This document shows, one piece after another, positions 8,764 through 52,414 of a DNA stretch of 64,000 bases. This stretch comes from Felis catus. Taxonomy: Eukaryota. Position 1 is the stretch's first letter, and each line of letters begins with the position of its first letter. The stretch lies in contig NC_058377.1 in the NCBI RefSeq assembly GCF_018350175.1, forward strand, positions 100,750,001 to 100,814,000, read 5' to 3'. A program made the translations under genes and the position numbers. Under the pieces are notes generated by a model, which did not search any database, was not told the origin of the DNA, and worked only from the letters and a program-made list of their open reading frames with translations.

Positions 8764-8786
8764 TACAGTTAAGAATTTAAACAACT

Positions 8787-22349: not shown

Positions 22350-23285
22350 ATGGGCAAGGGAAACTGCTCCGGTGTGACCGAGTTCATTCTCCTCGGATTC
22401 GCAGAAGCCCCTGAGTTGAGAGTTGCCCTCTTCTCTGTGTTCTTTCTCATCTATGGAGTCACGGTGCTGGGCAACCTGGGCATGATGGCAGTGATTCAGG
22501 TCAGCTGTCACCTTCACACTCCCATGTACTTTTTCCTCAGCCACTTATCCTTTGTGGATTTTTGCTACTCCACCGTCATCGTGCCAAAGATGCTAACTAA
22601 TATCTTAAACGAGGACAAAACCATTTCCTTCCTGGGGTGCAGCGTGCAATTCTACTTGTTTTGTACATGTGTGGTAAGTGAGGTCTTCCTGTTGGCGGTC
22701 ATGGCCTATGACCGCTTCGTGGCCATCTGGAACCCACTGTTGTACACGGTCACCATGTCCCGGAATCTCTGTGTGGAGGTGGTGTCTTGTTGCTACCTGT
22801 GTGGGATGGTGTGTTCTCTGATCCACTTGTGTTTAGCTCTTGAGATCACATCCTACAGATCAAATGTGATTGACCACTTCTTCTGCGATCTGCCTCCTCT
22901 CTTGTCCCTTGCTTGCTCTGATGTGACTATGAATGAACTGCTGCTGTACATCGTGGCCACCTTCAATGAGATCACCACCATTGTGATCATCCTCACCTCC
23001 TACTTGCTAATTCTCATCACCATCCTGAGGATGCACTCTGCCGAGGGAAGGCGCAAAGCCTTTTCCACCTGTGCCTCCCACCTCACAGCCATCCTTGTCT
23101 TCCACGGAACAATCCTTTTCACTTACTGCCGGCCCAGTTCTGGCAACAGTATGGATACTGACAAGGTGGCCACGGTGTTCTACACTGTAGTGATTCCCAT
23201 GCTCAACCCCCTCATCTATAGCCTCCGGAACAAGGATGTGAAGGAAGCGCTCAGAAAAATGGTGAGCTCCAAAATATTTTCCTAG
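22350..23285 (+). CDS. Olfactory receptor, OR5L1/OR5L2-like (G2), 311 aa
   Basis: ORF 22251-23285; likely start is accATGG at 22350 (MGKGNCS with N-glycosylation sequon). OR5L-type CRPSSGNS and [10 protein letters not shown]; all OR motifs present except AIC>AIW. Confidence 0.93.
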
Positions 23286-23814
23286 AAAATATTTTCTTTG
23301 CGAGACTCAAGTTCCCACAGGGCAGGCTGGTTGAGCGGTGAATGGGTGGTTGTAGTGTTTGAGTGGAGGGTAGAGCCAGGGGGTAGGTAGTTAAGAGCGA
23401 TTCTTTTTGATTCACTTACCTTTATGAATCTTCCATTTGCCTCAAAGTTAGGACTGAGTATATTTCAAATTTTAAGCCTACTTCTTTTCTTTTCTTCAAT
23501 CTATAATCTTTGAAATGGATAGGAGTAATGGATTCCTAAGACATGTTTGGTTTGCTCTATAACCTTCATAAGCTTAATGAAGAACTCTTGAGAATCATGC
23601 TCTCTTTCAGTATCTATGATGGAAAATTCATTCCTTTTCAAAATTGAATTCCTGCCATTTTACAATGAAGAACACATCTTTGTCCAACAGTTGATACATA
23701 GAGTGCGATTTCCACATGCACACATGTCATTTTTATCTTTTTATTCTTTTTGATACATTTATTGCTTATTTTTTGTTTTCCTTATTATTTGTCTCAGTGT
23801 ACAGTGTTTTTGGA

Positions 23815-23937
23815 ACTTCAGATAGTATCTCATCTGAAAAAGTGGAGTTAATCTTAATTACTTCACATGGATGTTAGTAAAATTAAATTGCATGTCATGT
23901 GCAAAGAGCCTAGAATAATCCCTGGCACATAAATAGT
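23815..23937 (+). mobile_element. MIR relic (copy at +8713)
   Basis: ctcatctgaaaaagtgg..atgtgcaaagagcctagaa..cctggcacata. Confidence 0.6.
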
Positions 23938-24005
23938 TTTCTGTTTCTCTCTCTTCCTTCCCTTATATTGTCCTAATATTACATATATACTTTTGGTCAC
24001 ATGTG

Positions 24006-24039
<34 letters not shown>

Positions 24040-24224
24040 GATTTGCCATCATTGAATAACCCTTACTACAAGTAGCTGCATTTCTGACTTAGGTCACTTG
24101 TCACATTTTTGTTGTTTGTTTCCTCAATTTTTGTCTCCATTATAACTCTCCATTTGGATCAAACGCTGTCACTTAAAATTGGAATTCTAAGCTATTTGTA
24201 GAAAACATAAATATTTCATTTTCA

Positions 24225-24990
24225 AGCCAAAATATGGAAAGACCCTAAATGTCAACCAACTGATGAATGCACAAAGAAGATGTGATATATCTATATCTAT
24301 ATCTATATCTGTATCTATATCTATATCTATATCTATCATCTATATCTAGAGAGAGAGAGGAATATTACTGAGCCACCAAAAAGAGTGAAATCTTGCTATT
24401 TGCAACAACCTGGATGGAATTAGAGATGATTATGCTGAGTGAAATAAGTCAGTCAAAGGCAAATACCATATTATTTTCTCTCATATGTGGAATTTTTTTT
24501 TAATTTTTTTTTCAACGTTTATTTATTTTTGGGACAGAGAGAGACAGCGCATGAACAGGGGAGGGGCAGAGAGAGAGGGAGACACAGAATCTGAAACAGG
24601 CTCCAGGCTCTGAGCCATCAGCCCAGAGCCTGACGCGGGGCTCAAACTCCCAGACCGCGAGATCATGACCTGGCTAAAGTTCGACGCCCAACCGACTGTG
24701 CCACCCAGGCGCCCCTCATATGTGGAATTTAAGAAACAAAGCAGATGAATATAGTGGGGAAAAAAGAGAGCTAAACCATAGAATAGTCTCTTAACTAGGG
24801 AAGAAACTGAATGTTGCCAGATGGGAGGTGGGTGGGGGAATGGATTAAACGTGTGATGGATACTAAGGAGGGCAGTTGTGATGAGCACTGGGTGTTGGAT
24901 GTAAGTGATAAATCACTGAAATCTACATCTGGAATTGATATTACACTGTATGTTAACTAAATGGAATTTAAATAAAAACCTGAAAAAAAA
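24225..24990 (+). mobile_element. Carnivore L1 3' fragment inserted in the OR pseudogene
   Basis: ORF2 end, 3'UTR and A tail; TSD tcattttca at 24216-24224 and 24991-24999; internal (TATATC)n at ~24285-24347. Confidence 0.85.
24496..24715 (-). mobile_element. SINEC_Fc nested in the L1 fragment
   Basis: TSD tcatatgtggaattt. Confidence 0.9.
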
Positions 24991-27029
24991 TCATTTTCAG
25001 GGTGCATACTGGACTTTATGTTACATCCCTGTGGTTCCTGAATTAATTCTGCTATGACAGTGTGTGACAGCTTCGTGGCCATTTGCAACACTTTGCATTA
25101 CACAGGTGCTGTGCCCCAGAAACCCCGTGCCCTACTACAGGTTGTATCAAATGCATGGGGAGTAGCATGTTTCCTGAAACTCACATGTTCTGCTTTCGAG
25201 GTATCTTTTAGTGCTTCATCACAGTCACTTCTGTGAGTTCTCCTCACTAATGTCTCTTTCTTGTTCTGAGTCTTATGTCAGCCAGTTGCTTCTCGCTGCT
25301 TCTCACAATGAGGTGAGCACAGAGCTCTTCTTCCTCCTGTCTTATGAGGTTTTCATTGCCACCTCTCCAGACACATTCATCAGGTGAGCATCAAGAAATC
25401 CTCTTCAACTGTCAGCTTCACACTTGACCGATCACCGTTTTCTACGGCACCATTCTCTTCTCCTAGTCTCTGCCCTACCTCCTAAACCTCCAGGCACACA
25501 AAGTGTTACCTGTTATATACGGTGGTGATCCTCTTGTTGAAGCCCCTTATCTATAGACTGAGATATAAGGACACGAAAGACACAGTCAGACACTTTTTTT
25601 TTCCATAGTGAATGGTAAACACTTACCTCTGTTATTATAGAACATCTTTCTGTGATTTTTGAAGGAGCTGTCAATCAAGCTCATTTTTAAACATCACTTA
25701 GATTGTCCAAAAGACAGAATACTTACAATGGGAAGAATATGAATTTTAGGTCTGAGAAATCATACCTGGCTCTGATAATATAAAATCGGCCAGTTGGTTT
25801 ATCTGAACCAGTCTTTATCTACAAAAATGATATAATGTGATGTAACTCATGGAGTGGAATGTGAAAAAAAATAAAATGTAGACAGCATATCTGGCATTTG
25901 TATATGTGCAATACATGCTAGTTGTATTCTCTTCTCTTCACTGCTAAGCGATAGGTTGCAGGTGTTAAATACACAGCCACTTTTGCAGTTTAAATTCAAT
26001 GAAATTGATGAAAGGAAAGAAATACATAGTCTTCTTTTCAAAAACCTCACAAGCCAGTAGTATTAGTAAATATCATAATGTTTGGTCAGGAGACACGTCA
26101 AAATCATATGTGGATATCAAAGAGATTATTTCATAATTGTGTGCATCCTTTGCTTGAACTTGAAGGATGGGCAGGTTTTGAAAAGACACAGAAGAGAAAG
26201 ACACAAGGTGTATTCAGGAGTAAAGAACAGGAACAACATTTGAGAGGTGAGCATGAATAATAAAGCCAATGATTCAGCAATATTGTGAGCTACTGTTTTG
26301 TGTCATATGCATTCAAGGTATCTTGTTAGGTGCTGGAAGGAATGAGAATTTGCATAAGATACACTTATTATTCTCAATTCCTTCAAAAAGAGTTCCCTTG
26401 TGGAGGGTGCAAATATTACAAGAAGTTTAGAAATACTAGCGTGTTTCCTAGAATAGTGAGAACAAAAACAAACCAAATATATTCACGTTCTATGTTTTAG
26501 GCTCCCTAAACATTTATTTTCCTTAAATGTTGTTTTAAATTGTCATTTGTAAATTATAATCTTAACAAGTAATTAATCAAACTTAGGTTATTGTGTCTAT
26601 TAGGAAAGATTAGCTTCTCTCTGGTAGTAGTAACATTTATTATAAGATGGCCTCATAGATAAAGGTGTCTAATTTTCAAAAATCTTATGACATCATATTT
26701 ATCTTTCTTCTGTCATTAATTTTGCTTGAATTACTTACGTATCCTTTGTTTGGTACTCTTTGTCATTGGTAAATCCCAAATTAGTCCAGAAAATTATTAT
26801 GAGAAAAAATAATAGCTGTGTTGGTTGAGGGTAAAATAAACACTGGATAATAACCATATATTGGTTCATGAAATAATTTGGAATGGTTCTGTGATCTTAA
26901 ACTTACAGTAATTAATTAAAGTCAACTTATTTCAGAAGTAGAACTATATAATTATGACCCAAACTATCTTATATATTTGCATATATTCACGTATATGAAA
27001 CTGCCTTCTTTTACACATTGTCACTTGAT

Positions 27030-28040
27030 TTGAACTTACCTGGAACGCTTGTAGTAAAGTAGCAGAAATGTTATATTGTTCTTGATTGGAGTCAATGATG
27101 AAAATGAAAACTAACCTATGAAATTTAATAGATGCTTCTAAGTGTTTAGAGGGAAATATATGTCTTTGAATAACTGTATTAGAAATGAAGAAAACTCTCA
27201 AAATTAGAATCTTAGCTTCCACATTAAGAATCAAAAAAAAAAAAAAAAGAAAAAAGAAAAGAAAAGAAAAAGAAAAAAAGAACAAGGGAGGTTATAATAA
27301 AGACCAGATTATCAGTCAATAAAGTAGAAAAATTAAAAGTAGAGATCATTGAGTTTGCACTGTGAAAAGATTACTACCATTGACAAAATTTTAGCTAGAA
27401 TTACTAGGAGAAAAGGAAACCAGAAACAAATTAGTACAATTAGTAAGGATAGTAATCTTGCAAAAATTTTATGCCAACAATTTAGTCAACTTAGATGATA
27501 CAGACAGATTTGAAAAAGATAAATTTTCCCAAGATGACAAAGAAGTAGAAAATCTGAATAGATATGTGACAATAAATTCAATTTGTAATGAAAATATTCT
27601 CACACTCCTTCCATCAATATCCAGACAATTACTCTTACTAAATATCTATGTAGGCAATAACACTGGTTGTTACACAGATGGCTTCACCAGTTACTTTTAC
27701 TAAATAACTACATAAGCAATGGTACCATTGTGAGTTACTTTATTTAGGAGACAGAGACCGTGATCCTTTTTCCAATTCATGCAGTTATATCAGTATTACC
27801 CTGATACCAAAGCCAAACAAAGGCAACACACAGAGGAAAACAGAAAGCAAAATCCCTCATGGATACAAACCCAAGAATTCTCAACAAATCCTTGTATCCA
27901 ATAATAAGATAAAATAGATGCACTAAAACATAAAAAGGCTTATGAGCCACACCAAGGGAGATTTATCTCAGAAATGCGAAGTTGGTTTAACATATGAAAA
28001 ACAATGTAATATATCACTTACATAGAATGATGGAGATGGG
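27030..28040 (+). mobile_element. Ancient L1M ORF2 fragment (copy ~35743-36750)
   Basis: Decayed KFYANNLVNLDD, EVENLNR and SITLIPKP motifs. Confidence 0.7.
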
Positions 28041-31000
28041 GAACCGGATGGAATGTCTCCTCAGCCTTGGGTGCCATCTTTGGCACATCAATTTTGTAAA
28101 ATATAATCATATTATATGGTAGTTGAGAGAATACCAATGTATTTCCTTGAAACTACATTTTACCACATATACCTTTACAAATTTATGTGCACAGCCAGTG
28201 ATACACAGAGACGAATGGAAAACTGTGGCCTAGATTGATCTTTTAAAGTCAGAAGAACACATCTGGGAAAGATATCTGAGGGGTCCCATTTGATGACTTC
28301 CACCATTGCACATGCATTGGAAAAAAAAATGCAGTCTCAGAAATCTCTCTGGATTTATTTTTTTTTCCATACATTCATATGGGTGGAAAACCAGATGGAC
28401 CTCAATTTCTTTTATTGATCATTTATTTTGAATGTGTCCAAGTTTCAACCGCCTGTAAGATAAGCATAAAAACTGGAATTGCTCTCCTGGCTGGTTACTA
28501 GGAAGCTAAAGTAAGTGAATATTTGTATAATAGTTAGAATGGGTTCCAACACATAGCAAGTGTGAGTTATTATATGGTTTTCTGACCACTGGAGTCATTA
28601 TTTTTTTGACTTTTTTGTTATTTAAAGGAATTCTGATGCAGCTGTAGTCCCCGTGCCCTACAGGAATCTAGGGGATGTTGTAATGTTATAAGAAAGGAAG
28701 AACTTCTAAGAGATATGCATGGCATGTCATTATGGCAATATGAGCTGTGTCCCACACATACGACACTTAATGTGACCTCTATCACGTAGCACCACAAATT
28801 CTGGGAGGAAGCATATGTGGTTTTAAACCATTGTTTCCCAATTTGGGATAATTTAAAAAATAAATTTCCTGATGATATTCCATAGAGATGAACTATTAGT
28901 TGTGTTATATCATACATCACCTTGGTTTAATTTTTATATATTTTGTTATACCATAGAGATTAGTAATTGTTTTGGAGCTTAATGGGCCCATTCCCCAGGA
29001 GCTTAAATTACAGTACAAGTAAGTGTCTGCCTGCTATATACATCTTATATCTTCAGCACCAGGGACAAAACTAGGTCACTCAGGTTTGTTAGCAAGAACT
29101 AGGTTTTGGTTACTTGAAAATAGAAATGAATATATTTTGTCCATAAACAATTATTTTAAAGATATATTGAACTCAACTCTCTTCTAATTAGAGAATGTTT
29201 TAACAGGACCCATATTTCTGTGCAGTTACTGTTTAGAGTGCTTTTGTGTTTTGGTATTCAGAAACAATTAATGGTGAATTTGGAACCGTTTTCTCTGTAA
29301 CATAAAACATGGATGTGTGTAAAAGAATGCTAAATAAACAAATGGTATCTCTCTCTCTCTCTCTCGCTCTCTCTCTCATCTCTTACCACCCATTTTTCAG
29401 ACCGATCTCTATCACAGCATCTAACATGTATGACCATTGAGAGCGTCCTTAGTTTTCATATTAATGCTGAGGTTTGCATTTCTGTTCCTGCCAGATGGTT
29501 ATCGAGAGTCAGGACTTATGAACTCTCTGTGGTTAGAAAAAGAGATGAATTCTTTTGGATTTGTTTTGGGTTTGTTATGAAATGGTTTCTTATTATCAGC
29601 CTAGGAGATTATGAAGCAAAACATTTGCCAGGTTGAATATCCTCTTTGAGAAGTAGGCAAGTAGGTCAGGTATTTTGCTTTGTTTTGTTTTTGTTCTTGG
29701 TCAGGTAATGGAAAACTGTGACTTAAGGGAAGTGATATGTTTCCATGTCTTTAAGGTTCGCTCAAGAGACCGAGAAGATACCAAGATATGCTTCCATTCC
29801 AGAACCTCTTCACTCAATTTTCATTACGCATAAGTGGAGAAGTCATGATTCTAGTCCTTGTGCTGTCTAGAAGTGGGAGCAGAGAATAGAATCCCTCAAT
29901 TTTTATTTGCCTTTTCCTTTAAGAAGGGCCTCAGTGGTAGATCTCCCTTATATAGAGCATACAATGTAATCATTTTTGCAACCAACTACTTAAACAATCT
30001 CTATCATGTGTATTCATATCTCTATGGGTGCATCTTCATTTGCGTCTATATGTATATGCTGAGTGTACTATTCAGTATCCTTTTTATTTAAAAAAAACAC
30101 CTCATAAAAGGGATTTTACATAGTATGATAATTTTCTGTCCTAGATATGACGCCCCAAAGTTTAACACTTGCTCCACTTCTGAAAATATTTTTTATGGTA
30201 AATATTATAAACAGTAATGCAATACAGTTTTGGACATGATTTTTCACAACTTTATCAATGTAACTAAATATCTTTTAATAGCTTATGAGGAATAAAATCT
30301 ATCAAAAAAATATCAGATAGCTTTTATTGTTGTCAGGGTCAAGACTTGGATATATACCCCTTCATTACTTTCCAGAAAAAGGTATTCAAGAGATCTATCT
30401 CTCTGAATCTTTATTAGCATAGATTGTTATTATCATAATTAATTAAGCTAGTAAATCAATTAACCACATAGTGGATTTGATAGGCACAATTCTCACTTTC
30501 AATGTATATTTTAAATCTCTTGTTTCATAATTCAGATTTTAACGAGTTTTTGTGAGCTACAAACATCAAAATTTCTATCACACTTTTCCATAATAGAATA
30601 TGAGAAAACTTTGTTTCAAATTTATGTTCCTGATAGAGTCACGTAAAAATAAAAAAACAAAAAAGTATTTGGAGCATCAGAGTAGGTGTTACTCTCCTGA
30701 ACAGAGCTTATTAAGTTTCTTCAGAGAACAGATGCTAGTGTCTGTATGGCTTTGAAATATATCATTGAATCTATCTTAAATTCCACCCAGAAACTGAACT
30801 TAATCATAGATAAAGTGATAGATAAGGGTTGGAATCATTCAAGCTTTCTACTGATGCCTAAGTCAGTTTTGGTCAGTGGGATCCACTGAGTCTTTAACCT
30901 TTTGAATTACTTGACCACTGTGCTTCTGTTGTATCTTATACATACATTGTTTGATATCAATGTTATATTCTACTGAAATTAATGTTAGCCTGTTTTTTCC

Positions 31001-31062
31001 TCCCTTTTTAGAAGAAAGACAATATTTATCATTTGTTTCCCTAAGTCTGACACCTGGCAGGA

Positions 31063-31998
31063 ATGGGCACGGGAAACTGCTCCAGTGTGACCGAGTTCAT
31101 TCTCCTCGGATTCGCAGAAGCCCCCGAGTTGAGAGTCGCCCTCTTCTCTGTGTTCCTCCTCATCTATGGAGTCACGGTGCTGGGCAACCTGGGGATGATG
31201 GCAGTGATTCAGGTCAGCTGTCACCTTCACACTCCCATGTACTTTTTCCTCAGCCACTTATCCTTTGTGGATTCTTGCTACTCCACCGTCATCGTGCCAA
31301 AGATGCTAACTAATATCTTAAACGAGGACAAAACCATTTCCTTCCTGGGGTGCTGCGTGCAATTCTACTTGTTTTGTACATGTGTGGTAAGTGAGGTCTT
31401 CCTGTTGGCGGTCATGGCCTATGACCGCTTCGTGGCCATCTGGAACCCACTGTTGTACACGGTCACCATGTCCCGGAATCTCTGTGTGGAGCTGGTGTCT
31501 TGTTGCTACCTGTGTGGGATGGTGTGTTCTCTGATCCACTTGTGTTTAGCTCTTGAGATCACATCCTACAGATCAAATGTGATTGACCACTTCTTCTGCG
31601 ATCTGCCCCCTCTCTTGTCCCTTGCTTGCTCTGATGTCACTATGAATGAACTCATGGTATTCATTGTGGCCACCTTCAATGAGATCACCACCATCGTGAT
31701 CATCCTCACCTCCTACTTGCTAATTCTCATCACCATCCTGAGGATGCACTCTGCCGAGGGAAGGCGCAAAGCCTTTTCCACCTGTGCCTCCCACCTCACA
31801 GCCATCCTTGTCTTCCACGGAACAATCCTTTTCACTTACTGCCGGCCCAGTTCTGGCAACAGTATGGATACTGACAAGGTGGCCACGGTGTTCTACACTG
31901 CAGTGATTCCCATGCTCAACCCCCTCATCTATAGCCTCCGGAACAAGGATGTGAAGGAAGCGCTCAGAAAAATGGTGAGCTCCAAAATATTTTCCTAG
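31063..31998 (+). CDS. Olfactory receptor, OR5L-like (G3), 311 aa, hybrid gene
   Basis: Intact ORF; acceptor ctggcag 2 nt before the ATG; 5' flank shared with G4, 3' flank shared with G2. Confidence 0.93.
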
Positions 31999-32718
31999 AA
32001 AATATTTTCTTTGCGAGACTCAAGTTCCCACAGGGCAGGCTGGTTGAGCGGTGAATGGGTGGTTGTAGTGTTTGAGTGGAGGGTAGAGCCAGGGGGTAGG
32101 TAGTTAAGAGCGATTCTTTTTGATTCACTTACCTTTATGAATCTTCCATTTGCCTCAAAGTTAGGACTGAGTATATTTCAAATTTTAAGCCTACTTCTTT
32201 TCTTTTCTTCAATCTATAATCTTTGAAATGGATAGGAGTAATGGATTCCTAAGACATGTTTGGTTTGCTCTATAACCTTCATAAGCTTAATGAAGAACTC
32301 TTGAGAATCATGCTCTCTTTCAGTATCTACGATGGAAAATTCATTCCTTTTCAAAATTGAATTCCTGCCATTTTACAATGAAGAACACATCTTTGTCCAA
32401 CAGTTGATACATAGAGTGCGATTTCCACATGCACACATGTCATTTTTATCTTTTTATTCTTTTTGATACATTTATTGCTTATTTTTTGTTTTCCTTATTA
32501 TTTGTCTCAGTGTACAGTGTTTTTGGAACTTCAGATAGTATCTCATCTGAAAAAGTGGAGTTAATCTTAATTACTTCACATGGATGTTAGTAAAATTAAA
32601 TTGCATGTCATGTGCAAAGAGCCTAGAATAATCCCTGGCACATAAATAGTTTTCTGTTTCTCTCTCTTCCTTCCCTTATATTGTCCTAATATTACATATA
32701 TACTTTTGGTCACATGTG

Positions 32719-32752
<34 letters not shown>

Positions 32753-32902
32753 GATTTGCCATCATTGAATAACCCTTACTACAAGTAGCTGCATTTCTGA
32801 CTTAGGTCACTTGTCACATTTTTGTTGTTTGTTTCCTCAATTTTTGTCTCCATTATAACTCTCCATTTGGATCAAACGCTGTCACTTAAAATTGGAATTC
32901 TA

Positions 32903-41444: not shown

Positions 41445-42339
41445 GGAAGTTCAGAGGAGTGGACATTTTTTTTTTGGTTTGTTTGTATTTTGTTTTAATG
41501 TGACTGCAGTTTCAAGAACCACTTTTAAAACATCCTTATCATTCTTTGTGAACTATCTCCTCTCTGCACTGAAATTTCTCATAGTTCTGGTAGTTTGGTT
41601 CTATTCCCAGTTCCTCTGGAAAGTCATATTTATTGTTCAATGAAGATTCATGGTGCACTGACTTTATGCTACTCATTCATCTAGGAACTTGGGATATATT
41701 AGTGAAAAAAGCAATGAATGATCTTCGCTTTCCTGGAACTTTTATTTTAGCAGGCAATATACAATTAAAGAAATTAATTATTATTAAAAATACATTTAAG
41801 CCATGTGAAGTATTTTAATCACTCATTGGGTAGTAGAGTAACTCCTAATGTAAAACAGTATGTTCATAGAAGATTTCACTGAAAAGCTGCATTTGAACAA
41901 AAACTTAAGGGAAAGCATTTCAGTGTGCAGGAAACATGAGGAGAAAAGACCATAAAGAAAGAGACAGTAATATTTTTTGGAAAACAAAAAACAATACACA
42001 AAATCAAAGAGGTCAGACTAGATTGAAGAAGCAGAGGTGGTTAAGAGTAATAGAATAGGACAAGGTTTCAAAGGGACTATTTTCCCAACTCGATATTTAA
42101 CTTTTTAAATATTTCTGCTTTAACTCTCAGTGAATCATGATGACCTAAAGGAAGGATATTCACCCTTCTCCAACAGGGTCAGAGTGGATGGCAGGGAGGA
42201 AGACACTTATGCCTGCTATATGGTAGCCACTCAATATTTGATAAAGATGGTTTTTATAATTCCATAACTTTTGTAATGGTTGTAGGTATATATGGGACTA
42301 ATCAGGGGTTGGAGAAGTGATTTTAAAATATAACATTTT

Positions 42340-42548
42340 GGGGGCACCTGGATGGCTCAGTTGTTTAAGTGTCTGACTCTTGGTTTTGGCTCAGGTCATG
42401 ATCTCATGGTTCATGAGTTCAAACCCCACATTGGGCTCTATGCTGACAGTGTGGAGCCTGCTTGGTATTCTCTCTCTCTCCCTGTCTCTCTGCCCCTTCT
42501 ACACTCTCTCTCTCTCCTTTTCTTCCAGACTAAATTAATAAACAAAAA
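42340..42548 (+). mobile_element. CAN-SINE shared with 6249
   Basis: Same flanks and near-identical body. Confidence 0.88.
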
Positions 42549-44307
42549 TATATTTATATAATTTTTTGTATAAAATTTTCCTAATGCTGCTCCAGAGTTT
42601 CAAGCATTATGTCAGAGAAAAATGATTAATTTTAATTGTTTATTTCATGACCTCAAGAGAATGGGGCAAGACATAATCTCTAGGGCTCATGTCCCAAAGG
42701 TTGCACTATAGATATACGAATATACCATCAGTCCCAACCAAGAGTGGCCTTACTTTTGCCATCAGCAGGTTTGTTTTCAGATTCTAGAGACCGGTTGATA
42801 TTAATTTCAATGTAGGGATCTGGGAAGCAGCACGGTAGGGAAACTTACCCTTAGTTCTAGACAGTTCTTGAGAATTATTTAGTCATTACAAAAGTAACAT
42901 ATCTGAACCAGCAAGGAAGAGAAAGTACATTTATGCTACAAGGTTTTGTCTTAGAGGGCCTGGCTCAGATGAACAAGGGGTACCCTGGGTGGGAGGATAG
43001 AAGAGGTCTGAGAACTTCAGGAATGTGCATTGTTCTGTTTCTGTAAGTTACAGAAGATATAGTCAAGGTAGGATAGAGAAGATTTAAATAAAATGAAACT
43101 AGCAGAGATTGAATAGACTCTCTAGTGAAAAAAAATTAAAAGGGGCCAGCTTTAATTAAGACGATAAAGCAGAAAAAAATTAGAGAAAAATTAGAACAAA
43201 ATAGGGAAACAAAGGCAAGAAGATTTCAGCTGTTATATTTCTTGGACTCAATGGTAGAGAAAGATTTTACCAACAATGTAATAATAGTATTTGGGATGCA
43301 AGAATCATCATGTTGAATATCACATTCATTTAAAATGAAACCTGAAAAGCCTTAGTAAGTTAAATATTATATTAAGCAAGAAGTGTGATAATGAGAACAT
43401 CTAGCTTCATGATGGATGTCTTTTGAGGTTGTCTTTAATACTCAGACGTATGACTGACTATAGGGACAGAGAGGTCCATTAAGCTCTCAGTCTTGAATAT
43501 GATCTGATATCTTTATTGATGGGCCATCTGAAACTATTTCTTGGGTTGTGGGTCCAGAGATACCCTTAACAGAGAGATGATTAACAGTTTTCTGGTGTCT
43601 AGACCTAGAACATGGGTCAGAGTCTGGTGTGTAGGAATAGACACATGGCTGGAACTCCAATCAGGGCACTAGTCACAGATACGTAGATTAGTCCCTACTT
43701 GCATATCATTGGGAAAGTCAAGGTTTCTTTTATCACCCCTAGAATAAGGAAGTGGACATGATTATCTTTATCACCTATTCTAATTATTTATCAAGCGATG
43801 AGGAAAGATTGAGAATTAAGAGCCCATTTGTTGAGAAGAATATCCTGAAAAACAAGTTAAGGTTTATTTGATATCAGATTTACTGAGTCAGAAAGAAAAA
43901 GATTAAAGTACTTTGTGAAATGTAACATAAAGTGTTATGGGTGTTTTTTCTTAATGTCATAGTGTAAACATATGTTGTAGACATTAATTTGTTTGGAAAT
44001 TCCTCATTTTTGTACTGATTATAAGGCTGGCATAATCAGTCATTATATTATCCTAGGTGTATCTTTTATGAACTTCTAATGTTCAAGGGAAACTGAAAAC
44101 TTTATGGGAAGTTTGATTTAAAATAACCATAAATCCCTTTATCTCATATACTACTTATAAATATTAAAATTTACAGTTGAGTACTTAAACAATCTTTAAA
44201 GGTTTTATCTATCAACCTATTTATTTATTTATTTGTTTGTTTGTTTGTTTATTTATTTACATAATCTCTACACCCAATGTGGGTCTTGAACTTAAAACGC
44301 CGAGATT

Positions 44308-44520
44308 GGGGCGCCTGGGTGGCGCAGTAGGTTAAGCGTCCGACTTCAGCCAGGTCACGATCTCGCGGTCCGTGAGTTCGAGCCCCGCGTCGGGCTCTGG
44401 GCTGATGCTCAGAGCCTGGAGCCTGTTTCTGATTCTGTGTCTCCCTCTCTCTCTGCCCCTCCCCCATTCATGCTTTGTCTCTCTCTGTCCCAAAAATAAA
44501 CGTTGAAAAAAAAATTTTTA
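44308..44520 (+). mobile_element. Young SINEC_Fc nested in an older SINE
   Basis: TSD aaaacgccgagat. Confidence 0.92.
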
Positions 44521-44821
44521 AAAACGCCGAGATCAAGAGCCGCATGCTCTAGTCAGCCAGGCACCCCAAAGACTTAAAATTTTTTAATTCAATAATTATA
44601 TTGATTTTTAACTTAAAGAGCATTTGAAAACTGTTTTGCATATTTTCAAATATTAGCTAGTTAGCATATCTTGCTAACAAACACATAAAGAAATTATGAA
44701 AAGACATTTTGCTTCATCTTCCAGTGGTGTAAGGGGCAGATAGGCAAGCTTCTTAGTTGTTCACTCTCTTTAATATTTTTATTTTCAGGACCAGTTCAGA
44801 TTCTGACAAGCAGAAACCATC

Positions 44822-45763
44822 ATGTTACCATCAGATAGAAATAAAACTGGGGCTGTGTTCACTCTCTTGGGCTTCTCAGATTACCCAGAACTGCAAGTCC
44901 CTCTCTTCTTGATTTTTTTGGCCATCTACAGTGTCACTGTTGTAGGAAATATTGGGATGATAGTTATAATCAAGATTAACTTCAAACTGCACACCCCCAT
45001 GTACTTTTTCCTCAGCCACCTCTCATTTGTGGATTTCTGCTATTCCTCCATCATTGTTCCCAAGACCCTGGCAAACCTAGTTGTAGAAGACAGGACCATT
45101 TCACTTTCAGGATGTGTAGTCCAATTCTTTTTCTTTTGCACCTTTGTGGTAGCTGAATCCTTTTTATTGGCTGTGATGGCCTATGACCGTTTTGTGGCCA
45201 TCTGCAACCCTCTGCTCTACACAGTGGCCATGTCCCAGAAACTCTGTGCCATGCTGGTGGTCGGATCATACGCATGGGGAGTAGCATGTTCCCTGATACT
45301 CACATGTTCTGCTATCAGGTTATCTTTCCAGGGTTTCAACACAATCAATCACTTCTTCTGTGAGTTCTCTGCATTGCTGTCCCTGTCTTGCTCTGATATT
45401 TACATCAATCAGTTGCTGCTTTTCATTTTTGCCACCTTTAATGAGGTCAGCACACTGCTCATCATTCTCATGTCTTATGTGTTTATCATTGTCACCATCC
45501 TCAAGATGCGTTCAGCCAGTGGTCGTCGCAAAGCCTTCTCCACCTGTGCCTCCCACTTGACAGCCATCACCATCTTCCACGGAACCATCCTCTTCCTCTA
45601 CTGTGTTCCTAACTCCAAAAACTCCAGGCATACAGTCAAAGTGGCGTCTGTGTTTTACACAGTGGTGATCCCTATGCTGAATCCCTTGATCTACAGTCTG
45701 AGAAATAAGGATGTCAAGGATACAGTCAGCAAGATAATGGATACTAAAATATTTTTTTCTTAA
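44822..45763 (+). CDS. OR5D18: Olfactory receptor, OR5D18-like (copy 2), 313 aa
   Basis: Intact ORF, close paralog of 9147-10082; keeps TFNE, IFHGT and the DTK C-terminus like human OR5D18. Confidence 0.93.
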
Positions 45764-46500
45764 GCATATTATTTGATTAGAGTTTGGCCCTGAAATATAA
45801 ATTGTGTACCCATAAAGGTTGATTATAAAGATACATTTAAAAATAATGAAGAGTCGATGTACAATGAAAAGAATGCACATTTTTATTCAAAGAGACTGAC
45901 CTTGATGCTCTCTCTTGCTTACTGGAAAAAAAGTCAGCAATCCCCCCTCATCTTTGGTTTTTAATCCACAAAAATGAGGTAACATAAGTTAGCTCCTAAT
46001 CTGATTGTGAGGTCTAAAAGGTAATATAAATATTATGTGGATACTTTGTGTAATATCAATAAACATTAATTTAATTTCCCTTTCTTGTAACATACCTGGA
46101 GTAGACTAGGCTCTCAATAAACATATGAATTTATCTCCTAAAAGTAAAAGTAGCAGTTAAAATGGGACATAGCATTCCTTTCTGCCAATGTAAAAGCCAG
46201 TGTTAACAGTAGGGCAGTGAAGAAAGTGGCCTTTGTATAAAGTGGGAATGAAAAGTACCACCAAGTGTTTGAAAGAAAAGTTCAAGTCCCTAGGGGACTC
46301 TAAATAACCCCTCAAAAAAACTAGGTGTTGTTTGAACTTGACTTTGGATAACAAGATGAACAGAGTTTCAGGACACAACATATGAGTTTTATTCAGAAGA
46401 GCAAAGCATTGCAAAATCAGGGAGGTCAGAATGCAATACTGAGTCACTTATCAAACAAACATTTTATTGAATGATTACTATATAACATGTGTGTGTGTGC

Positions 46501-46536
<36 letters not shown>

Positions 46537-46867
46537 ACGTGTGTGTGAATGTGTGTGTTGCATTGTGTGTATAGGTTACTGGGCATGAGTGGAAAGTTGA
46601 TAAGAATGTGTTTTCAAAGAAGCTCCATTGTGGCAGTTTGATAAGCTATCATAGGCTCCACCAAAGGCTTAAAGATGTTAGATTGGATTTCACAAACTCT
46701 CTTTATTTATTTATTTATTTATTTTAGAGGAAAGAGAGAGTGAAGGGCAGAGGGAGAGAGCAAGAGAGAGAGAGAATCTTAAGCAGGTTCTATGCTTAGC
46801 ACAGAGCCTGATGTAGGGCCAAGTCCCACAATCTTGGAATCAAGACCTTAGTCAAAATCAAGAGTTG

Positions 46868-47090
46868 GGGGGGCGCCTAGGTGGCGCAGTCGGTTAAGCG
46901 TCCCACTTCAGCCAGGTCATGATCTCGCGGTCCGTGAGTTCGAGCCCCGCGTCGGGCTCTGGGCTGATGGCTCAGAGCCTGGAGCCTGTTTCCGATTCTG
47001 TGTCTCCCTCTCTCTCTGCCTCTCGCCCGTTCATGCTTTGTCTCTCTCTGTCCCAAAAATAATTAAACGTTGAAAAAAAAATTAAAAAAA
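46868..47090 (+). mobile_element. Young SINEC_Fc nested in an older SINE
   Basis: TSD aaaatcaagagttgg. Confidence 0.92.
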
Positions 47091-49008
47091 AAATCAAGAG
47101 TTGGATGCTCAACTGACAATCCACTCAGGAGCCCCTGGATTTCAGAATATCTTATATGCAAAAAATAAGCATAATGAGTTCCTGCCCATCCTATGTTTCA
47201 TACTATTATTCTGCCTATGAAGATGTCAAAAACATTATCAAAACTTTATTAATTATTTTCCTAAACATGAGCATAATCTTTGAATCCTTCTGAACTAAAC
47301 TACTACCTTAAAAAAAAGTTCTCAAAACGAATTGTTTATATACTTTAGTCAAAATACAATAAAAATAAAAATACTAATTAGCATCAAGGCCTACTTAATC
47401 TGGAAAATTTAAAATACCAGATTTCTATAATATTAATAACACAGTTTACTTAAACACCTTGTACGTGCTTCTTTTTCTCTCTACTCAATATAGATAGTTA
47501 AAATTTCAAACAAATTATTACTATATTGAAAAACATAAATTTCCTGGTATTCTGGTAAGGGAGAACAATTTTATATGGGCTCGATAAAGTTACTTGAAAT
47601 GTGCATATTATTTTGAACTTATGATCATTATTAAAATGTTCTATTTATATACATCATAAAATAAGGAATCACTTAAATAACCATTTTCATGGAAAGATAC
47701 AATCTAAGAAACAGTGTTTTAGAAATGGATGTCTGAGGAGGGAATACATTTCTCTTCTATTGACTTCGGTTTCTCTGCATATCCACAAATTTATCTTTCA
47801 CTTTCCTTTGGTCCTTTTTTTTTTTTCAAGACACTGAATACTTTTTAGTGAGCCTTTTAGTTTACAACATGAGGTAAAAGGATACTCAGTCTCTTTAGCC
47901 AATATTTTACACAGCTGTAGGAAAATATTTCAAACTTTAGGGAATTATAATGGATTACATATATTACAGGTTGGGGAGCAGGTAAACAATCTCTGTGTTC
48001 TTGAATTTTCCAGTTCAGTCTTCCCTCCCAATAGTACCCAGCTCTAATTAGTTACATACATTTCTTCAAGGCCATGTTTCATTGTTGCTGATGTCTTCAG
48101 ACCTGAAACCTCGCTATTTCAGTCAATGTCTGCGAATTCCGCTTCAAAAATGCGTTTTGCACTGGGTGGAATTTTGGCACCTTTCTTTCCATAAGCCCAT
48201 TCTGGATCAATCTCTAGTTAAGCCTTTTCTCCTTTACTCACTTATACACTTATACAACAAATTAACTCATTATTCATAAATGAATACAATTTTCCTACAC
48301 TTATACAATCCTAATTTTCCTCAAAATTTAGGAAATTATTTATGTGACTCTTACATTGAATCAAAGATGAGTAATTTCTCTTTAGAGAGACTCTCATTGT
48401 ACTTGTGTCTTGCTTGGACAAGGGATGATCATTTGGGGGTAAAAGTAACACCAACCATTTAGCTCTTACTCTGAGGAAACCAAAGCCTGTAACACGTAAG
48501 TGACCCGGCCAAGGTTGTAAAAGCAATTGTTGACAGAAATGAAAGCAATTGGTTAAGACTCCAGACATATCTTCTACTAAACTCTAGCAGACAATCTTGT
48601 GTTTTCTTTCATTTCAAGTTGCCACATTTCAAATTCATTATGACAGATTCTGTTGCTTCTATATAGAACATGACATATTAGCCTCCAAATTTTTTGGTTG
48701 TGTGCTTCTCAGTTTTGGAAAGAATTTAAGTCTGCATACAAAATATTTCATCATAAATTTAAATAGCACAAAAAGCGTGATTTCTGTTGTGTGGCATAAT
48801 TCATTTAAATTACATAAATAAGAACATCTGAAAGCAGATTTGTGTCACTCTTCTTCCTCAACTCATGTTCAATGTTACCCCAATCCATTGAATATTATTT
48901 TATAAATGACATTCATACTTTTAATCTCTTGAATTAATATTGCTCTTGGCAATATTGAAAGTTCTTTTTCATAGATTAAGTTAACCTTGTAATAATACAA
49001 TAATAATT

Positions 49009-49229
49009 GGGGGCGCCTGGGTGGCTCAGTCGGTTAAGCGTCCGACTTCGGCTCAGGTCATGATCTCACGGTCCGTGAGTTCGAGCCCCGCGTCAGGCTC
49101 TGTGCTGACAGCTCAGAGCCTGGAGCCTGTTTCAGATTCTGTGTCTCCCTTTCTCTCTGCCCCTCCCCTGTTCATGCTCTGTCTCTCTCTGTCTCAAAAA
49201 TAAATGTTAAAAAAAAAATTAAAAAAAAA
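49009..49229 (+). mobile_element. SINEC_Fc
   Basis: TSD aataataattg. Confidence 0.9.
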
Positions 49230-49714
49230 TAATAATAATTGCATCACTAATCAAAAACATAATTGCATTTGCAAATTTTGATAAAATACAATTACCCAAA
49301 ATTGAAAAAAAAATGTGTTTGCAAATATTTATTTTCATGAGAAGTATCATGAGTATATATTTGGATTTTTTATTTCAGTTAATTAAATGTATCCATGGAA
49401 AGATACCACTTAATGCTAGAAAGCAAGAGGGTTGAGCATCATCTCTATTTCTACTTCTTAAAAAGAAAATACTGAGACTTTTTGGTCATGTTAAGAGTAA
49501 ATGAGACTAGAAACTGTGTCAGAAATTGTGCTGTATTAGTAAGGTCACTCAAATCTTTCAACTCACCCAAGTTATGTGCCAGTTCCTCACAATGACTTTT
49601 TATCAGAAATTTAAAAAATAACGCATTAAACAAAATTTATACCAAGTTTCTCCGATTTTGTTGAAGGGCAAAATTTTGGAAATTAATTCTCTCAACAGGG
49701 TTTGTTTACCCAGT

Positions 49715-50212
49715 CTGGTAGATTGCAAACATAGCCAAAATTCTCCAGTCCTCTGGTGTCTATGCCACCGTGCAGCTCTTCTGATTACATGGTGGAGTCA
49801 GTTTCCCCACTCCTGGAGGGTAGTCTGCTTTTCTGAGTAGCTTTGGCTAATGGAGAGTAGTTGCAATGACGTTGTTCAAGTTTTAAGCTTCTGAGAGGCA
49901 ACATGGCTTTTTCATAACCTTGGGGATTTTCACAATCTCTCAGGAAAGTTGCCGTGTTAACAGGCACAACCTGTCACCCTTACCTCCAGCATATGATCTG
50001 ACATCTAGCCAAGTGCCCTAGGTGGGTGTAAAGTCCTCTTAGATCACCTAAACTGCCAAGCTCATATCATATACATAAGCAAACCAAGCCAAGATCAATC
50101 ATGTCATGATCAGATCTGCAGTACTATCTTACAGACTTACGCAACAGTGACCTATTCAATTAACAGTTGTTGTTTTCAACTAATATGTTTGGAAGTGGTT
50201 TCTCATACAAAT
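49715..50212 (+). mobile_element. Old MLT1-type LTR relic
   Basis: tggtagattgcaaacatagcca start and tatgtttggaagtggttt near the end. Confidence 0.5.
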
Positions 50213-50231
50213 GTTGGAATCACTCACTTTC

Positions 50232-50420
50232 TCTTTTGTTTGTTTGTTTATTTGTTTATATTGAGAGACACAGAGGGAGCGCGAGCAGGGAAGGGGCAGA
50301 GAGAGGGAGAGAGAGACTCGCAGGCAGGCTCCCTGCTCAGAGCAGTGCAGGATGCGGGGCTCAATCTCACAATGGTAAGATAATGACCTGAGCCAAAACT
50401 GAGTCAAACGCTTACACTGA
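50232..50420 (-). mobile_element. CAN-SINE lacking its 5' head
   Basis: Ends at cgcttacactga without gccacccaggcgcccc. Confidence 0.8.
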
Positions 50421-51010
50421 ACAACAAAATTAAGAAAATCACTGTGTTAATTTATAGAAAAAAAATGTGAGCATGGAGTGTAAAAGCTAAACATCTAAAC
50501 ATATGGGTAAAAAATCAACACTTGTGGGTTAACAACTTTCAACAGACATGCTTCTCAACATTTCAGTGGAAAACAGGGAAGGACGTGGTGTATTTTAAAA
50601 CATTATTTTCTGAGATCTCACTAGATTCAGTACTCATTAAACACTCTGCCAGGAAAACGGGATTTGAGTTTCATAACACAATGTGGCTAATTATGTTTGA
50701 GGTCTTTCTAATGATTCAGTGCTAAGCTGTAAATTGTGTAGGACTCGCTTAAGGAATCATATACACCGTGATGGATGTGGATGTTTCTGTGTGATCTGTG
50801 AATCAACGTGTGACCTTACGCATCTTTCCACAATGCCTGCACTTTTCCTAAACTTCACAAAAGCCGTGTCCTAATTCTTTGCGGAAGAAAAAAACTATCT
50901 TATGCATTGTCATGTCTTTTTTTTTTAAGAGACAGCCAAAAAATGAGTCTGGGATCACACAATGGAGGATAACTATGAATATTTTTCTCCAACCTCAATC
51001 AAATGGGAAC

Positions 51011-51961
51011 ATGGGCACGGAAAACTGCTCCGGTGTGACCGAGTTCATTCTCCTCGGATTCTCAGAAGCCCCTGAGTTGAGAGTCGCCCTCTTCTCTGTG
51101 TTCCTTCTCAGCTATGGAGTCACGGTGCTGGGCAACCTGGGCATGATGGCAGTGATTCAGGTCAGCTGTCACCTTCACACTCCCATGTACTTTTTCCTCA
51201 GCCACTTGTCCTTTGTGGACTTTTGCTACTCCACTGTCATCGTGCCAAATGTGCTGTCCAGTATCTTAAACAAGGGCAAAGCCATCTCCTTCCTGGGATG
51301 CATGGTGCAATTCTATTTCTTTTGTGCCTATGCAATCACTGAGGTCTTCCTTTTGGCTGTGATGGCCTATGACCGCTTTGTGGCCATCTGGAACCCACTG
51401 CTGTACACGGTCACCATGTCACAGAATCTTTGTGTGGAGCTGGTGTCTTGTTGCTACCTGTGTGGGATGGTGTGCTCTCTGATCCACTTGTGTTTAGCTC
51501 TGGAGATCCCATCCTGCACATCAAATGTGATTGGCCACTTCTTCTGCGATCTGCCCCCTCTCTTATCCCTTGCTTGCTCTGATGTGACTATGAATGAACT
51601 GCTGCTGTACATCGTGGCCACCTTCAATGAGATCACCACCATCGTGATCATCCTCACCTCCTACTTGCTAATTCTCATCACCATCCTGAGGATGCACTCT
51701 GCCGAGGGAAGGCGCAAAGCCTTTTCCACCTGTGCCTCCCACCTCACAGCCATCCTTGTCTTCCACGGAACAATCCTTTTCACTTACTGCCGGCCCAGTT
51801 CTGGCAACAGTGTGGATACTGACAAGGTGGCCACGGTGTTCTACACTGTAGTGATTCCCATGCTCAACCCCCTCATCTATAGCCTCCAGAACAAGGATGT
51901 GAAGGAAGCACTCAAGAAAGTGTTGGGATCTAGATTACCTTTTGAAAAACTATTTTCTTAA
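51011..51961 (+). CDS. Olfactory receptor, OR5L-like (G6), 316 aa
   Basis: ORF 50879-51961; likely start aacATGG at 51011 (MGTENCS). 5' flank shared with G2, C-terminus and 3' flank shared with G4. Confidence 0.92.
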
Positions 51962-52414
51962 CTAGACATCAGATATTTAATGAGGGGCTGGTTTTGGGTG
52001 GATGTGAATGAAAAGTAAAGTAGGTAAAAATTTTATGAGTTGGGGGACTATGCATGCTTTTTTGTTTTCCACTTGCTTGTCTTATTAAGCCATATATTAT
52101 CTGTTTTATGGATGATTCAAATGCACCTGGTAATGTTGCTGCTCTCTCCAATCTCTAATTGCTTTGAGTGGGTTTGGGAGGCCTTGTTAGACTCTGTTTC
52201 TTGGCTTGAGAACAAATCAATATATTTCTAACAAAGTGCACATAGAAAGACAAGTCTTTTCATCATCGTTAAAGCATGCAACCTTTTCCATTAGACTAAT
52301 TTTTCTAGGGAATGCACACACATCTGTCTCATAACCTATGTATTTTAGTGAACATTTGGAGTAAATTTCTGTGTAATATTTTTAGTCATTTTTTAGAAGT
52401 TTTAAAGTTTCTTT

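What the first reader, a model, noticed from the sequence alone, without database searches (positions are those of the whole stretch)
22350..52127. Four OR5L genes carry all four combinations of two upstream and two downstream modules
Seen: G2 is U1 (..caaatgggaccATG) + D1 (KMVSSKIFS and its flank); G3 is U2 (..ctggcaggaATG) + D1; G4 is U2 + D2 ([15 protein letters not shown]); G6 is U1 + D2. Diagnostic codons 8 (ggt/agt) and 21 (cct/ccc) follow the upstream flank, while codons 34, 66, 70, 80-117, 138, 268 and the C-terminus follow the downstream flank. Both switches therefore map to codons ~21-34, at the start of TM1. Inference: G3 and G6 look like the duplication and deletion products of unequal crossover between G2-type and G4-type genes at one intragenic site. 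Each receptor type now sits behind each of two promoter/5'UTR modules, which could separate odorant specificity from expression zone or choice frequency.
Basis: partly seen in the sequence, partly recalled or inferred. Interest (0 to 1): 0.85.

Follow-up and report, generated by a model that had tools for sequence, protein, structure and literature searches.

The report
Shuffled cat olfactory receptor gene cluster
Four near-identical smell-receptor genes in a cat-family genome do carry all four pairings of two upstream and two downstream flanks, but this comes from one very young unequal-crossover duplication plus ordinary gene conversion, both well-known ways in which receptor clusters evolve.

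Summary
G2 is U1+D1, G3 is U2+D1, G4 is U2+D2 and G6 is U1+D2. In this assembly both switches fall between CDS bases 64 and 100 (codons 21-34).

- **G3:** it is a genuine unequal-crossover (NAHR) duplication hybrid. It sits at the junction of an 8,713-bp tandem repeat (22350-40742). The two intergenic copies differ by only 0.6%. An independent 1.4-kb ENA contig encodes a G3 allele, and no G3-type protein was found in any other felid.
- **G6:** it is not the same-site deletion partner. Its flanks belong to a much older tandem segmental duplication (4878-40911 vs 40899-52128) and are 12-16% diverged. Its type-2 body is nearly identical to G4 (1 difference in 305 bp). A native island (bases 369-555) is 7.5% diverged, with pS 0.16.
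- **G6 relatives:** all eight G6-type proteins from other felids carry the type-1 patch and lack S34. Two of them keep the U1' leader.

So G6's switch is the edge of a recent G4-to-G6 gene-conversion tract. Any older fusion probably lay 3' of the patch.

This is a new member of a known kind and of moderate interest.

The parts
4878..40911 (+). Copy 1 of the old tandem segmental duplication S. It holds G1, a LINE-1 insertion, U1, G2, the young tandem repeat, G4 and D2.
   Evidence: Collinear blocks with 40899-52128 at 67-94% identity. The junction is clean at about 40905.
40899..52128 (+). Copy 2 of S. It holds G5, U1', G6 and D2'.
21767..22349 (+). U1, the proximal upstream flank of G2. It has a pyrimidine tract plus AG about 85 bp before the ATG.
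   Evidence: Aligns with 50420-51010 at 11.8% substitutions. Sequence read.
22350..23285 (+). G2: OR5L, 311 aa, U1 + type-1 body + D1.
   Evidence: N-terminus MGKG matches the type-1 genes of other felids.
22350..40742 (+). Young direct tandem repeat, period 8,713 bp, about 2.1 copies (G2 CDS, intergenic, G3 CDS, intergenic, G4 CDS).
   Evidence: Self-BLAST gives 98.2-98.4% over 9.7 kb. The intergenic copies differ at 47 of 7,777 positions (0.60%) plus 11 indels.
24976..25590 (+). Frameshifted, 5'-truncated OR pseudogene fragment in the G2-G3 spacer. Its copy lies at 33689-34303.
   Evidence: tblastn with G5 and G4: about 35% aa identity across three frames.
31063..31998 (+). G3: hybrid OR5L, 311 aa, U2 + G4-like 5' end + type-1 body + D1.
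   Evidence: Identical to G4 from -90 to +95. Follows G2 from base 101 on. An independent allele, P0022, shares the G3-only residues C98 and MVF198-200.
31126..31162 (+). Interval holding the G3 switch (CDS bases 64-100).
   Evidence: The last G4-type site is base 63 (or 94). The first G2-type site is base 101. In allele P0022 the switch lies after codon 34.
31653..31665 (+). G3-only cassette (ELMVF; 6 changes in 13 bp).
   Evidence: No donor exists in the window. The same residues occur in other felid paralogues.
39783..40733 (+). G4: OR5L, 316 aa, U2 + type-2 body + D2.
   Evidence: The MGTG..S + type-2 + tail-2 form is found in 12 or more felid proteins.
40734..40911 (+). D2, the downstream flank of G4 and the right end of S copy 1.
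   Evidence: Aligns with 51962-52128 at 15.7% substitutions plus 27 gap columns.
50420..51010 (+). U1', the proximal upstream flank of G6. An in-frame ATG at 50975 encodes the leader [12 protein letters not shown].
51011..51961 (+). G6: OR5L, 316 aa, U1' + D2', with a mosaic CDS.
51074..51378 (+). G4-derived conversion tract in G6 (CDS bases 64-368). It carries S34 and the type-2 TM2-TM3 patch.
   Evidence: 1 of 305 differences from G4, against 7.5% next door and 12-16% in the flanks. pS is 0.015.
51379..51565 (+). Native G6 segment (CDS bases 369-555).
   Evidence: 14 of 187 differences from both G4 and G2, pS 0.16-0.18. P167 and T170 are shared with G6-type proteins of other felids.
51566..51961 (+). 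3' CDS of G6, homogenised with the unit-1 genes. The tail is identical to G4.
   Evidence: 4 of 396 differences from G4. Divergence starts 6 bp after the stop.

Best explanation
This is an OR5D/OR5L olfactory-receptor cluster on a felid chromosome. It is being reshaped by two ordinary processes that act on the coding-sequence homology between old paralogues.

1. **Starting state (shown).** Two old OR5L paralogues have unalignable flanks. A is U1 + type-1 + D1. B is U2 + type-2 + D2. A decayed OR pseudogene lies between them.
2. **Old duplication (shown).** A tandem segmental duplication, S, copied everything from 4878 to about 40905. This produced G5 and G6.
3. **Old fusion (inferred).** In copy 2 the A' and B' genes fused by a deletion, leaving one gene with U1' and D2'. 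To judge from G6-type proteins in other cats, the join lay 3' of the TM2-TM3 patch.
4. **Recent conversion (the pattern is shown; the direction is inferred from other felids).** In the Felis lineage, gene conversion from G4 overwrote G6 bases 64-368 and most of bases 556-951. This imported the type-2 patch and the young S34 change and left a native island at bases 369-555.
5. **Very recent unequal crossover (shown).** A crossover between the 5' end of G4 and G2 duplicated 8,713 bp and created the hybrid G3.

Both boundaries lie within 100 bp of the ATG. This is probably because coding homology, and therefore any exchange, begins at the ATG (inferred).
For: **G3**
- The repeat period equals the gene spacing, and the hybrid sits at the junction.
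- The intergenic copies are 0.60% apart.
- G3 equals G4 from -90 to +95 and follows G2 from base 101.
- An independent ENA contig encodes protein P0022, which has G3's hybrid make-up and its private residues.
- MGTG + type-1 + tail-1 is seen only in the window and in P0022, among 46 felid proteins.
- In the Iriomote cat the G2-type and G4-type proteins have consecutive GenBank accessions, GAB5577826 and 827.

**G6**
- The collinear duplication has a clean junction.
- The U1 flank is 11.8% and the D2 flank 15.7% diverged. G4 vs G6 divergence is 0.33% over bases 64-368, 7.5% over 369-555 and 1.0% over 556-951.
- Fisher tests give p = 9.5e-6 and 7e-5; the scan test gives p = 3e-4. pS runs 0.015, 0.160, 0.024 across these segments.
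- All eight non-window MGTE-class proteins have the type-1 patch and I/F34. P0041 and P0167 carry the exact U1' leader together with the type-2 tail.
- S34 occurs only in Felis and Prionailurus G4-type genes, in G6 and in P0022.
Against: - No reads and no DNA from other felids could be examined. The copy number of the repeat and the G6 mosaic therefore rest on one assembly plus protein records.
- Orthology of the MGTE-class proteins is inferred from the N-terminus, the leader and accession order, not from synteny.
- G6 could always have had a type-2 patch that was merely re-homogenised with G4. Several other lineages would then each have converted to type 1.
- Divergence between the tandem copies is very uneven (0.1% to 4.8%), and a single clean event does not explain that.
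Confidence: 0.7

Rival explanations
1. G3 and G6 are the duplication and deletion products of two unequal crossovers between G2-type and G4-type genes at one and the same intragenic site (codons 21-34). G6's type-2 body descends from a B' copy.
For: - All four flank combinations exist, and both switches fall in bases 64-100.
- The structure of S implies that copy 2 once held both an A'-type 5' flank and a B'-type 3' flank.
Against: - G6 is 0.33% from G4 over bases 64-368, but 7.5% next door and 12-16% in the flanks.
- G6-type proteins elsewhere carry the type-1 patch, in two cases together with the U1' leader and the type-2 tail.
- S34 is a young G4-lineage state.
- The U1'+tail-2 gene is found in Prionailurus proteins and in a protein with puma-lineage-like residues, whereas G3 is specific to Felis. 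The two events are therefore far apart in time.
- The G3 switch itself differs between alleles.
Confidence: 0.1
2. U1+D2 (the G6 form) is the ancestral single gene of each duplication unit. The D1-pseudogene-U2 segment entered unit 1 later, for example by exchange with another OR5L locus. No deletion ever happened in unit 2.
For: - The hyena has a gene with a U1-like leader ([13 protein letters not shown]0020). P0065, with the same N-terminus, has a type-2-like tail.
- The window holds no relic of D1' or U2' in unit 2.
Against: - It needs an 8.7-kb insertion exactly inside a coding sequence.
- Type-1 and type-2 tails both occur across Carnivora.
- Patch pS between the two types (0.21) exceeds the unit-1/unit-2 flank divergence.
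- Pantherine proteins include MGTE + tail-1 and an extra tail-2 class (MGTG..G / MGME). This is what an undeleted A'-B' pair would look like.
Confidence: 0.08
3. Assembly artefact. The 8.7-kb repeat is a false duplication, or a chimeric join created G3, and G6's G4-like tract is a polishing error.
For: - A 4-kb stretch of the two copies is 99.9% identical.
- No read evidence could be obtained.
Against: - The copies differ by 67 substitutions and 11 indels, spread very unevenly.
- G3 has private changes, including a 6-base cassette with no donor in the window.
- An independent contig encodes a G3 allele.
- A type-1 patch that is 23% diverged would not attract G4 reads during polishing.
Confidence: 0.05

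Closest known systems
Human OR8U8/OR8U9 to OR8U1 (and OR51A2/OR51A4) NAHR fusion OR genes (Hasin et al. 2008, PMC2570968)
   Same: Unequal homologous recombination inside the roughly 0.9-kb coding exons of neighbouring paralogous OR genes makes an intact chimeric receptor. The chimera has one parent's 5' side and the other's 3' side, and the crossover lies in a stretch of identity.
   Different: OR8U1 is the deletion product. G3 is the reciprocal kind, a duplication product, and both parents are retained beside it. G6 has the flank pattern of a deletion product, but its present switch point comes from conversion.
Interlocus gene conversion producing mosaic OR coding regions (Sharon et al. 1999, as summarised in PMC1995454)
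   Same: Coding-region-limited exchange between paralogues whose flanks differ. It produces mosaics and homogenises sequence. This matches the G4-to-G6 tracts and the G2-G4 homogenisation over codons 123-299.
   Different: Here the tract carried the divergent TM2-TM3 patch into a gene that sits behind a different upstream region. The derived marker S34 and other-felid proteins give its direction.
Engineered OR coding-sequence swaps in mouse (Olfr2>Olfr1507, Ibarra-Soria et al. 2017, PMC5404925)
   Same: A receptor body is placed behind another gene's regulatory context.
   Different: The arrangement here is natural, not engineered. The bodies are not identical (about 12 aa differences within each pair), and no expression data were available.

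Membership tests
Class II olfactory receptor, OR5L subfamily (7TM GPCR) | Match to the OR 7TM family (PF13853 / PF00001), and closest named relatives are OR5L | tested here: met
   The precomputed Pfam domains for P0001 and P0002 are PF00001 and PF13853. The nearest named proteins are 'olfactory receptor 5L1-like' from felids and other carnivores, at 84-97% identity.
Class II olfactory receptor, OR5L subfamily (7TM GPCR) | Intact single-exon ORF of about 310-316 aa with the OR motifs ([29 protein letters not shown]) | tested here: met
   All four translations are open and contain these motifs.
NAHR duplication hybrid (G3) | A direct repeat whose period equals the spacing of the parent genes, with the hybrid at the junction | tested here: met
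   22350-32022 aligns with 31063-40742. The period is 8,713 bp.
NAHR duplication hybrid (G3) | The hybrid has the 5' flank of the downstream parent and the 3' flank of the upstream parent, and switches inside shared sequence | tested here: met
   U2 and bases 1-95 match G4. Base 101 to D1 matches G2.
NAHR duplication hybrid (G3) | Reads or long molecules span the junctions, and the copy number is confirmed | not testable with these tools
The only indirect support is the independent contig that encodes P0022.
   U1' aligns with U1 and D2' with D2.
   0.33% over bases 64-368, against 7.5% over bases 369-555 and 12-16% in the flanks.
   Protein level only. P0041 and P0167 have the U1' leader, the type-1 patch and the type-2 tail. 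All eight MGTE-class proteins have the type-1 patch.
Interlocus gene-conversion tract (G4 to G6) | A segment with significantly lower divergence than both neighbouring segments, also at synonymous sites | tested here: met
   Fisher p = 9.5e-6 and 3.4e-3. pS is 0.015 against 0.160.
Interlocus gene-conversion tract (G4 to G6) | A derived donor-lineage variant is present in the acceptor, and orthologues of the acceptor lack the tract | tested here: met
   S34 occurs only in Felis and Prionailurus G4-type proteins, in G6 and in P0022. G6-type proteins elsewhere have I/F34 and the type-1 patch. The evidence is from proteins, not DNA.

The most novel reading that the evidence does not exclude
The first roughly 100 bp of the OR5L coding exon, where homology between paralogues with unrelated flanks begins, may act as a recurrent exchange boundary. 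A crossover (G3) and a conversion tract (G6) both ended there. Whole receptor bodies would then be re-dealt as cassettes behind different regulatory regions. The resulting natural 2x2 set (U1 or U2 with type 1 or type 2) could show in one animal that zone or choice frequency follows the flank and not the receptor.
Probability: 0.15. Interest if true: 0.55.

Novelty: new member of a known kind. Interest (0 to 1): 0.36.

Why it matters
This locus shows, within one haplotype, both main engines of olfactory-receptor cluster evolution. One is a very young NAHR duplication that created an intact hybrid receptor. The other is coding-limited gene conversion that moved a divergent ligand-facing patch into a gene with a different upstream region.

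It also carries a caution. A neat "same breakpoint" pattern in paralogues can come from conversion edges near the limit of homology rather than from reciprocal crossovers.

The four flank-by-body combinations are real. If cat olfactory-epithelium expression data exist, they could serve as a natural test of cis-regulatory versus receptor effects on expression. Mouse swap experiments have already addressed that question.

Tried and rejected
No orthologous DNA from other felids could be fetched, so the cross-species work rests on protein records only.
- **RDP, GENECONV and GARD** are not installed. I used site patterns, Fisher tests, a scan statistic and NG86 pS/pN instead. The longest-identical-run test was not significant (p = 0.30), because one G6-private site at base 225 splits the tract.
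- **Flank homology.** I searched for U1-U2 and D1-D2 homology and found none (z 0.3 and 1.0).
- **ELMVF donor.** I looked for a donor of G3's ELMVF cassette in the window and found none.
- **Reciprocal products of one crossover.** Rejected, because the flank ages differ by more than 10-fold and U1'+tail-2 genes exist in other genera.
- **G6 as donor and G4 as acceptor.** Rejected, because G4-type genes across felids carry the type-2 patch while G6-type genes carry type 1.
- **RefSeq XP accession order.** Not used as gene order. Only the sequential GenBank GAB numbers of the Iriomote cat were used, and only as an inference.
- **Human sequence.** No contig that I took for human was met, and no human sequence was used.


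Full report
**What is there**

The window carries six intact, same-strand olfactory-receptor genes.
- Two are OR5D-like: G1 at 9147-10082 and G5 at 44822-45763.
- Four are OR5L: G2 at 22350-23285, G3 at 31063-31998, G4 at 39783-40733 and G6 at 51011-51961.

All six exact proteins sit on one 115,366,950-bp contig in NCBI. Their nearest named relatives are "olfactory receptor 5L1-like" proteins of many cat species. The genome is therefore a felid, apparently of the Felis lineage.

**The observation**

The four flank combinations are real.
- The U1 sequences of G2 and G6 align (21767-22349 vs 50420-51010).
- G3 and G4 share their whole upstream spacer.
- G2 and G3 share D1.
- G4 and G6 share about 178 bp of D2.
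- U1 vs U2 and D1 vs D2 have no detectable similarity.

The four-gene CDS alignment gives these site patterns:
- G2=G6 / G3=G4 occurs at bases 22 and 63 (codons 8 and 21).
- G2=G3 / G4=G6 occurs at 47 sites from base 101 (codon 34) to the tail. About 30 of them are packed into bases 240-351.
- G2=G4 / G3=G6 never occurs.

One small correction concerns the tails. The type-1 stop lies 15 bp before the position of the type-2 stop, and the first 15 bp of D1 align with the last five type-2 codons. The 311/316-aa difference is therefore a stop shift.

**G3 is a young unequal-crossover hybrid**

Self-comparison shows a direct repeat: 22350-32022 aligns with 31063-40742. Its period is 8,713 bp, which is exactly the gene spacing. 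The layout is G2 CDS, spacer, G3 CDS, spacer, G4 CDS. This is what NAHR between the downstream gene on one chromatid and the upstream gene on the other produces.

The two spacers differ at 47 of 7,777 positions (0.60%) plus 11 indels. G3 is identical to G4 from -90 to +95 and follows G2 from base 101.

Several results support G3 as a real and lineage-specific gene:
- An ENA contig of 1,378 bp from another data set encodes P0022. This protein has G3's hybrid make-up and its private residues C98 and MVF198-200, so G3 is not peculiar to this assembly.
- P0022 has S34 and H235, which are G4-like states. The apparent switch point therefore differs between alleles.
- Among 46 felid OR5L proteins, the combination MGTG + type-1 patch + type-1 tail occurs only in the window and in P0022.
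- In the Iriomote cat the G2-type and G4-type proteins carry consecutive GenBank accessions, GAB5577826 and 827. This suggests that no gene lies between them there. That step is an inference from submission order.

**G6 sits in a much older duplication**

Window 4878-40911 is collinear with 40899-52128. The junction is clean at about 40905, and block identities run from 67% to 94%. The differences between the two copies are:
- SINE insertions;
- a 6.15-kb LINE-1 present only in copy 1;
- the young 8.7-kb repeat;
- the absence from copy 2 of everything between the 5' part of an A-type gene and the 3' part of a B-type gene.

The duplicated unit ends about 178 bp after a B-type stop and includes an A-type upstream region. 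Copy 2 must therefore once have held both, or have been born with the deletion. This is inferred.

**G6's switch at codons 21-34 is not that deletion**

Divergence between G6 and its presumed parents is very uneven:

| Segment | Compared with | Differences | Divergence |
|---|---|---|---|
| U1 flank | G2 | 69 / 583 | 11.8% |
| CDS bases 1-63 | G4 | 4 / 63 | 6.3% |
| CDS bases 64-368 | G4 | 1 / 305 | 0.33% |
| CDS bases 369-555 | G4 | 14 / 187 | 7.5% |
| CDS bases 556-951 | G4 | 4 / 396 | 1.0% |
| D2 flank | G4 | 28 / 178, plus gaps | 15.7% |

Divergence in D2 begins 6 bp after the stop.

The contrast is significant. Fisher tests give p = 9.5e-6 and 7e-5, and the scan statistic gives p = 3e-4. 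It also holds at synonymous sites, where pS is 0.015, 0.160 and 0.024 over the three main CDS segments. Selection on the protein therefore cannot explain it.

The native island (bases 369-555) keeps P167 and T170, as in G6-type proteins of other cats.

Comparative proteins give the direction of transfer:
- The class with G6's N-terminus (MGTE) has eight members outside the window. All eight have the type-1 patch and I or F at codon 34.
- P0041 (Iriomote cat, GAB5577829) and P0167 (a Logan contig) start with [12 protein letters not shown]. This is the exact translation of G6's U1' leader and differs from G2's U1 at two residues. Both combine the type-1 patch with the type-2 tail.
- The G4 class (MGTG..S) has the type-2 patch across felids.
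- S34 is confined to Felis and Prionailurus G4-type genes, to G6 and to P0022.

The simplest reading is a recent G4-to-G6 conversion in the Felis lineage. Its 5' edge lies in bases 64-100. Any original A'xB' join lay 3' of the patch.

Pantherine proteins look like an unfused A'/B' pair. They include MGTE + type-1 tail and an extra tail-2 class, MGTG..G or MGME. This would date the fusion to the Felinae stem, but it is an inference from proteins only.

**Gene conversion is general in this family**

G2 and G4 have unalignable flanks, yet pS between them is only 0.023-0.036 over codons 123-299, against 0.21 over codons 22-122. Across felids, the N-terminus, patch, ELMVF/ELLLY cassette, codon 268 and tail occur in many combinations. 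I agree for G2 vs G4, but the G4-to-G6 tract carried that cassette with it.

**Why both boundaries sit near the ATG**

Homology between genes with different upstream regions starts at the ATG. An exchange that runs to the 5' limit of homology must therefore resolve within the first few tens of bases. This is an inference. The coincidence is also mild, about 1 in 10 for a second boundary landing in the first 100 of 936 bp.

**Function**

U1 and U2 each carry a pyrimidine tract plus AG some 15-85 bp before the ATG. The sequence immediately upstream is therefore intron end plus a short 5' UTR, and the promoters lie further up.
- G3 and G4 share all 7.8 kb of upstream spacer.
- G2 and G6 share most of the spacer back to G1 and G5, apart from repeat insertions.

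The genes therefore do sit in two regulatory contexts. Whether those contexts differ in zone or choice frequency could not be tested. In mouse, an engineered coding-sequence swap suggested that receptor sequence does not set the abundance of its own neuron type (PMC5404925).

**Comparison with what is known**
- NAHR fusion OR genes are described in human: OR8U8/OR8U9 to OR8U1, and OR51A2/OR51A4 (PMC2570968).
- Mosaic ORs made by gene conversion are described too (Sharon et al. 1999, via PMC1995454).
- A literature search found nothing on this cat locus.

The finding is a new, well-resolved example of known processes.

**Limits**
- No reads and no other-felid DNA were available.
- Divergence between the tandem copies is unexplained in detail. 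It is 0.1% over 4 kb but 4.8% between -505 and -91 of the ATGs.
- G3's ELMVF cassette has no donor in the window.

Noticed in passing
window 30558-30972 vs 39278-39692 (-505 to -91 of the G3 and G4 ATGs): There are 20 substitutions in 415 bp (4.8%) between the two otherwise 99.4-99.9% identical tandem copies. Perfect identity follows from -90 to +95. No third copy in the window could be the donor.
   Followed up: partly
window 31653-31665 (G3 codons 197-201): G3 has a private ELMVF cassette (6 changes in 13 bp) with no donor in the window. The same residues occur in G2-, G4- and G6-type proteins of other felids, so it behaves as a cassette shared across paralogues and species.
   Followed up: partly
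window ~11438-17590: A 6.15-kb LINE-1 lies on the + strand with an open 1,247-aa ORF2 (13654-17397). It is present only in copy 1 of the old duplication, so it inserted after that duplication.
   Followed up: no
window 5683-7507 vs 41771-43598, compared with 7928-11211 vs 43593-46863: Inside the old duplication, the block upstream of G1/G5 is 94% identical, whereas the blocks holding the G1 and G5 genes are about 80% identical. Yet the G1 and G5 proteins are 94% identical. Divergence is uneven here too.
   Followed up: no
window 23283-23300 and 40716-40733: The type-1 stop lies 15 bp before the position of the type-2 stop, and the first 15 bp of D1 align with the last five type-2 codons. The 311/316-aa length difference is a stop-codon shift, and A/B homology ends at the type-2 stop.
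   Followed up: yes
window 24976-25590 and 33689-34303: A frameshifted, 5'-truncated OR pseudogene fragment (about 35% aa identity to G5) lies in each copy of the spacer. The cluster therefore alternates OR5D-like and OR5L genes.
   Followed up: partly
proteins P0006/P0007 (jaguarundi), P0036 (tiger), P0102 (lion), P0040/P0043: Other felids carry further mosaics. Examples are a patch that switches type in its middle, a type-2 patch with a type-1 tail, and a type-1 patch with a type-2 tail. Lion has three type-1 genes. Exchange in this family is widespread and independent across lineages.
   Followed up: partly
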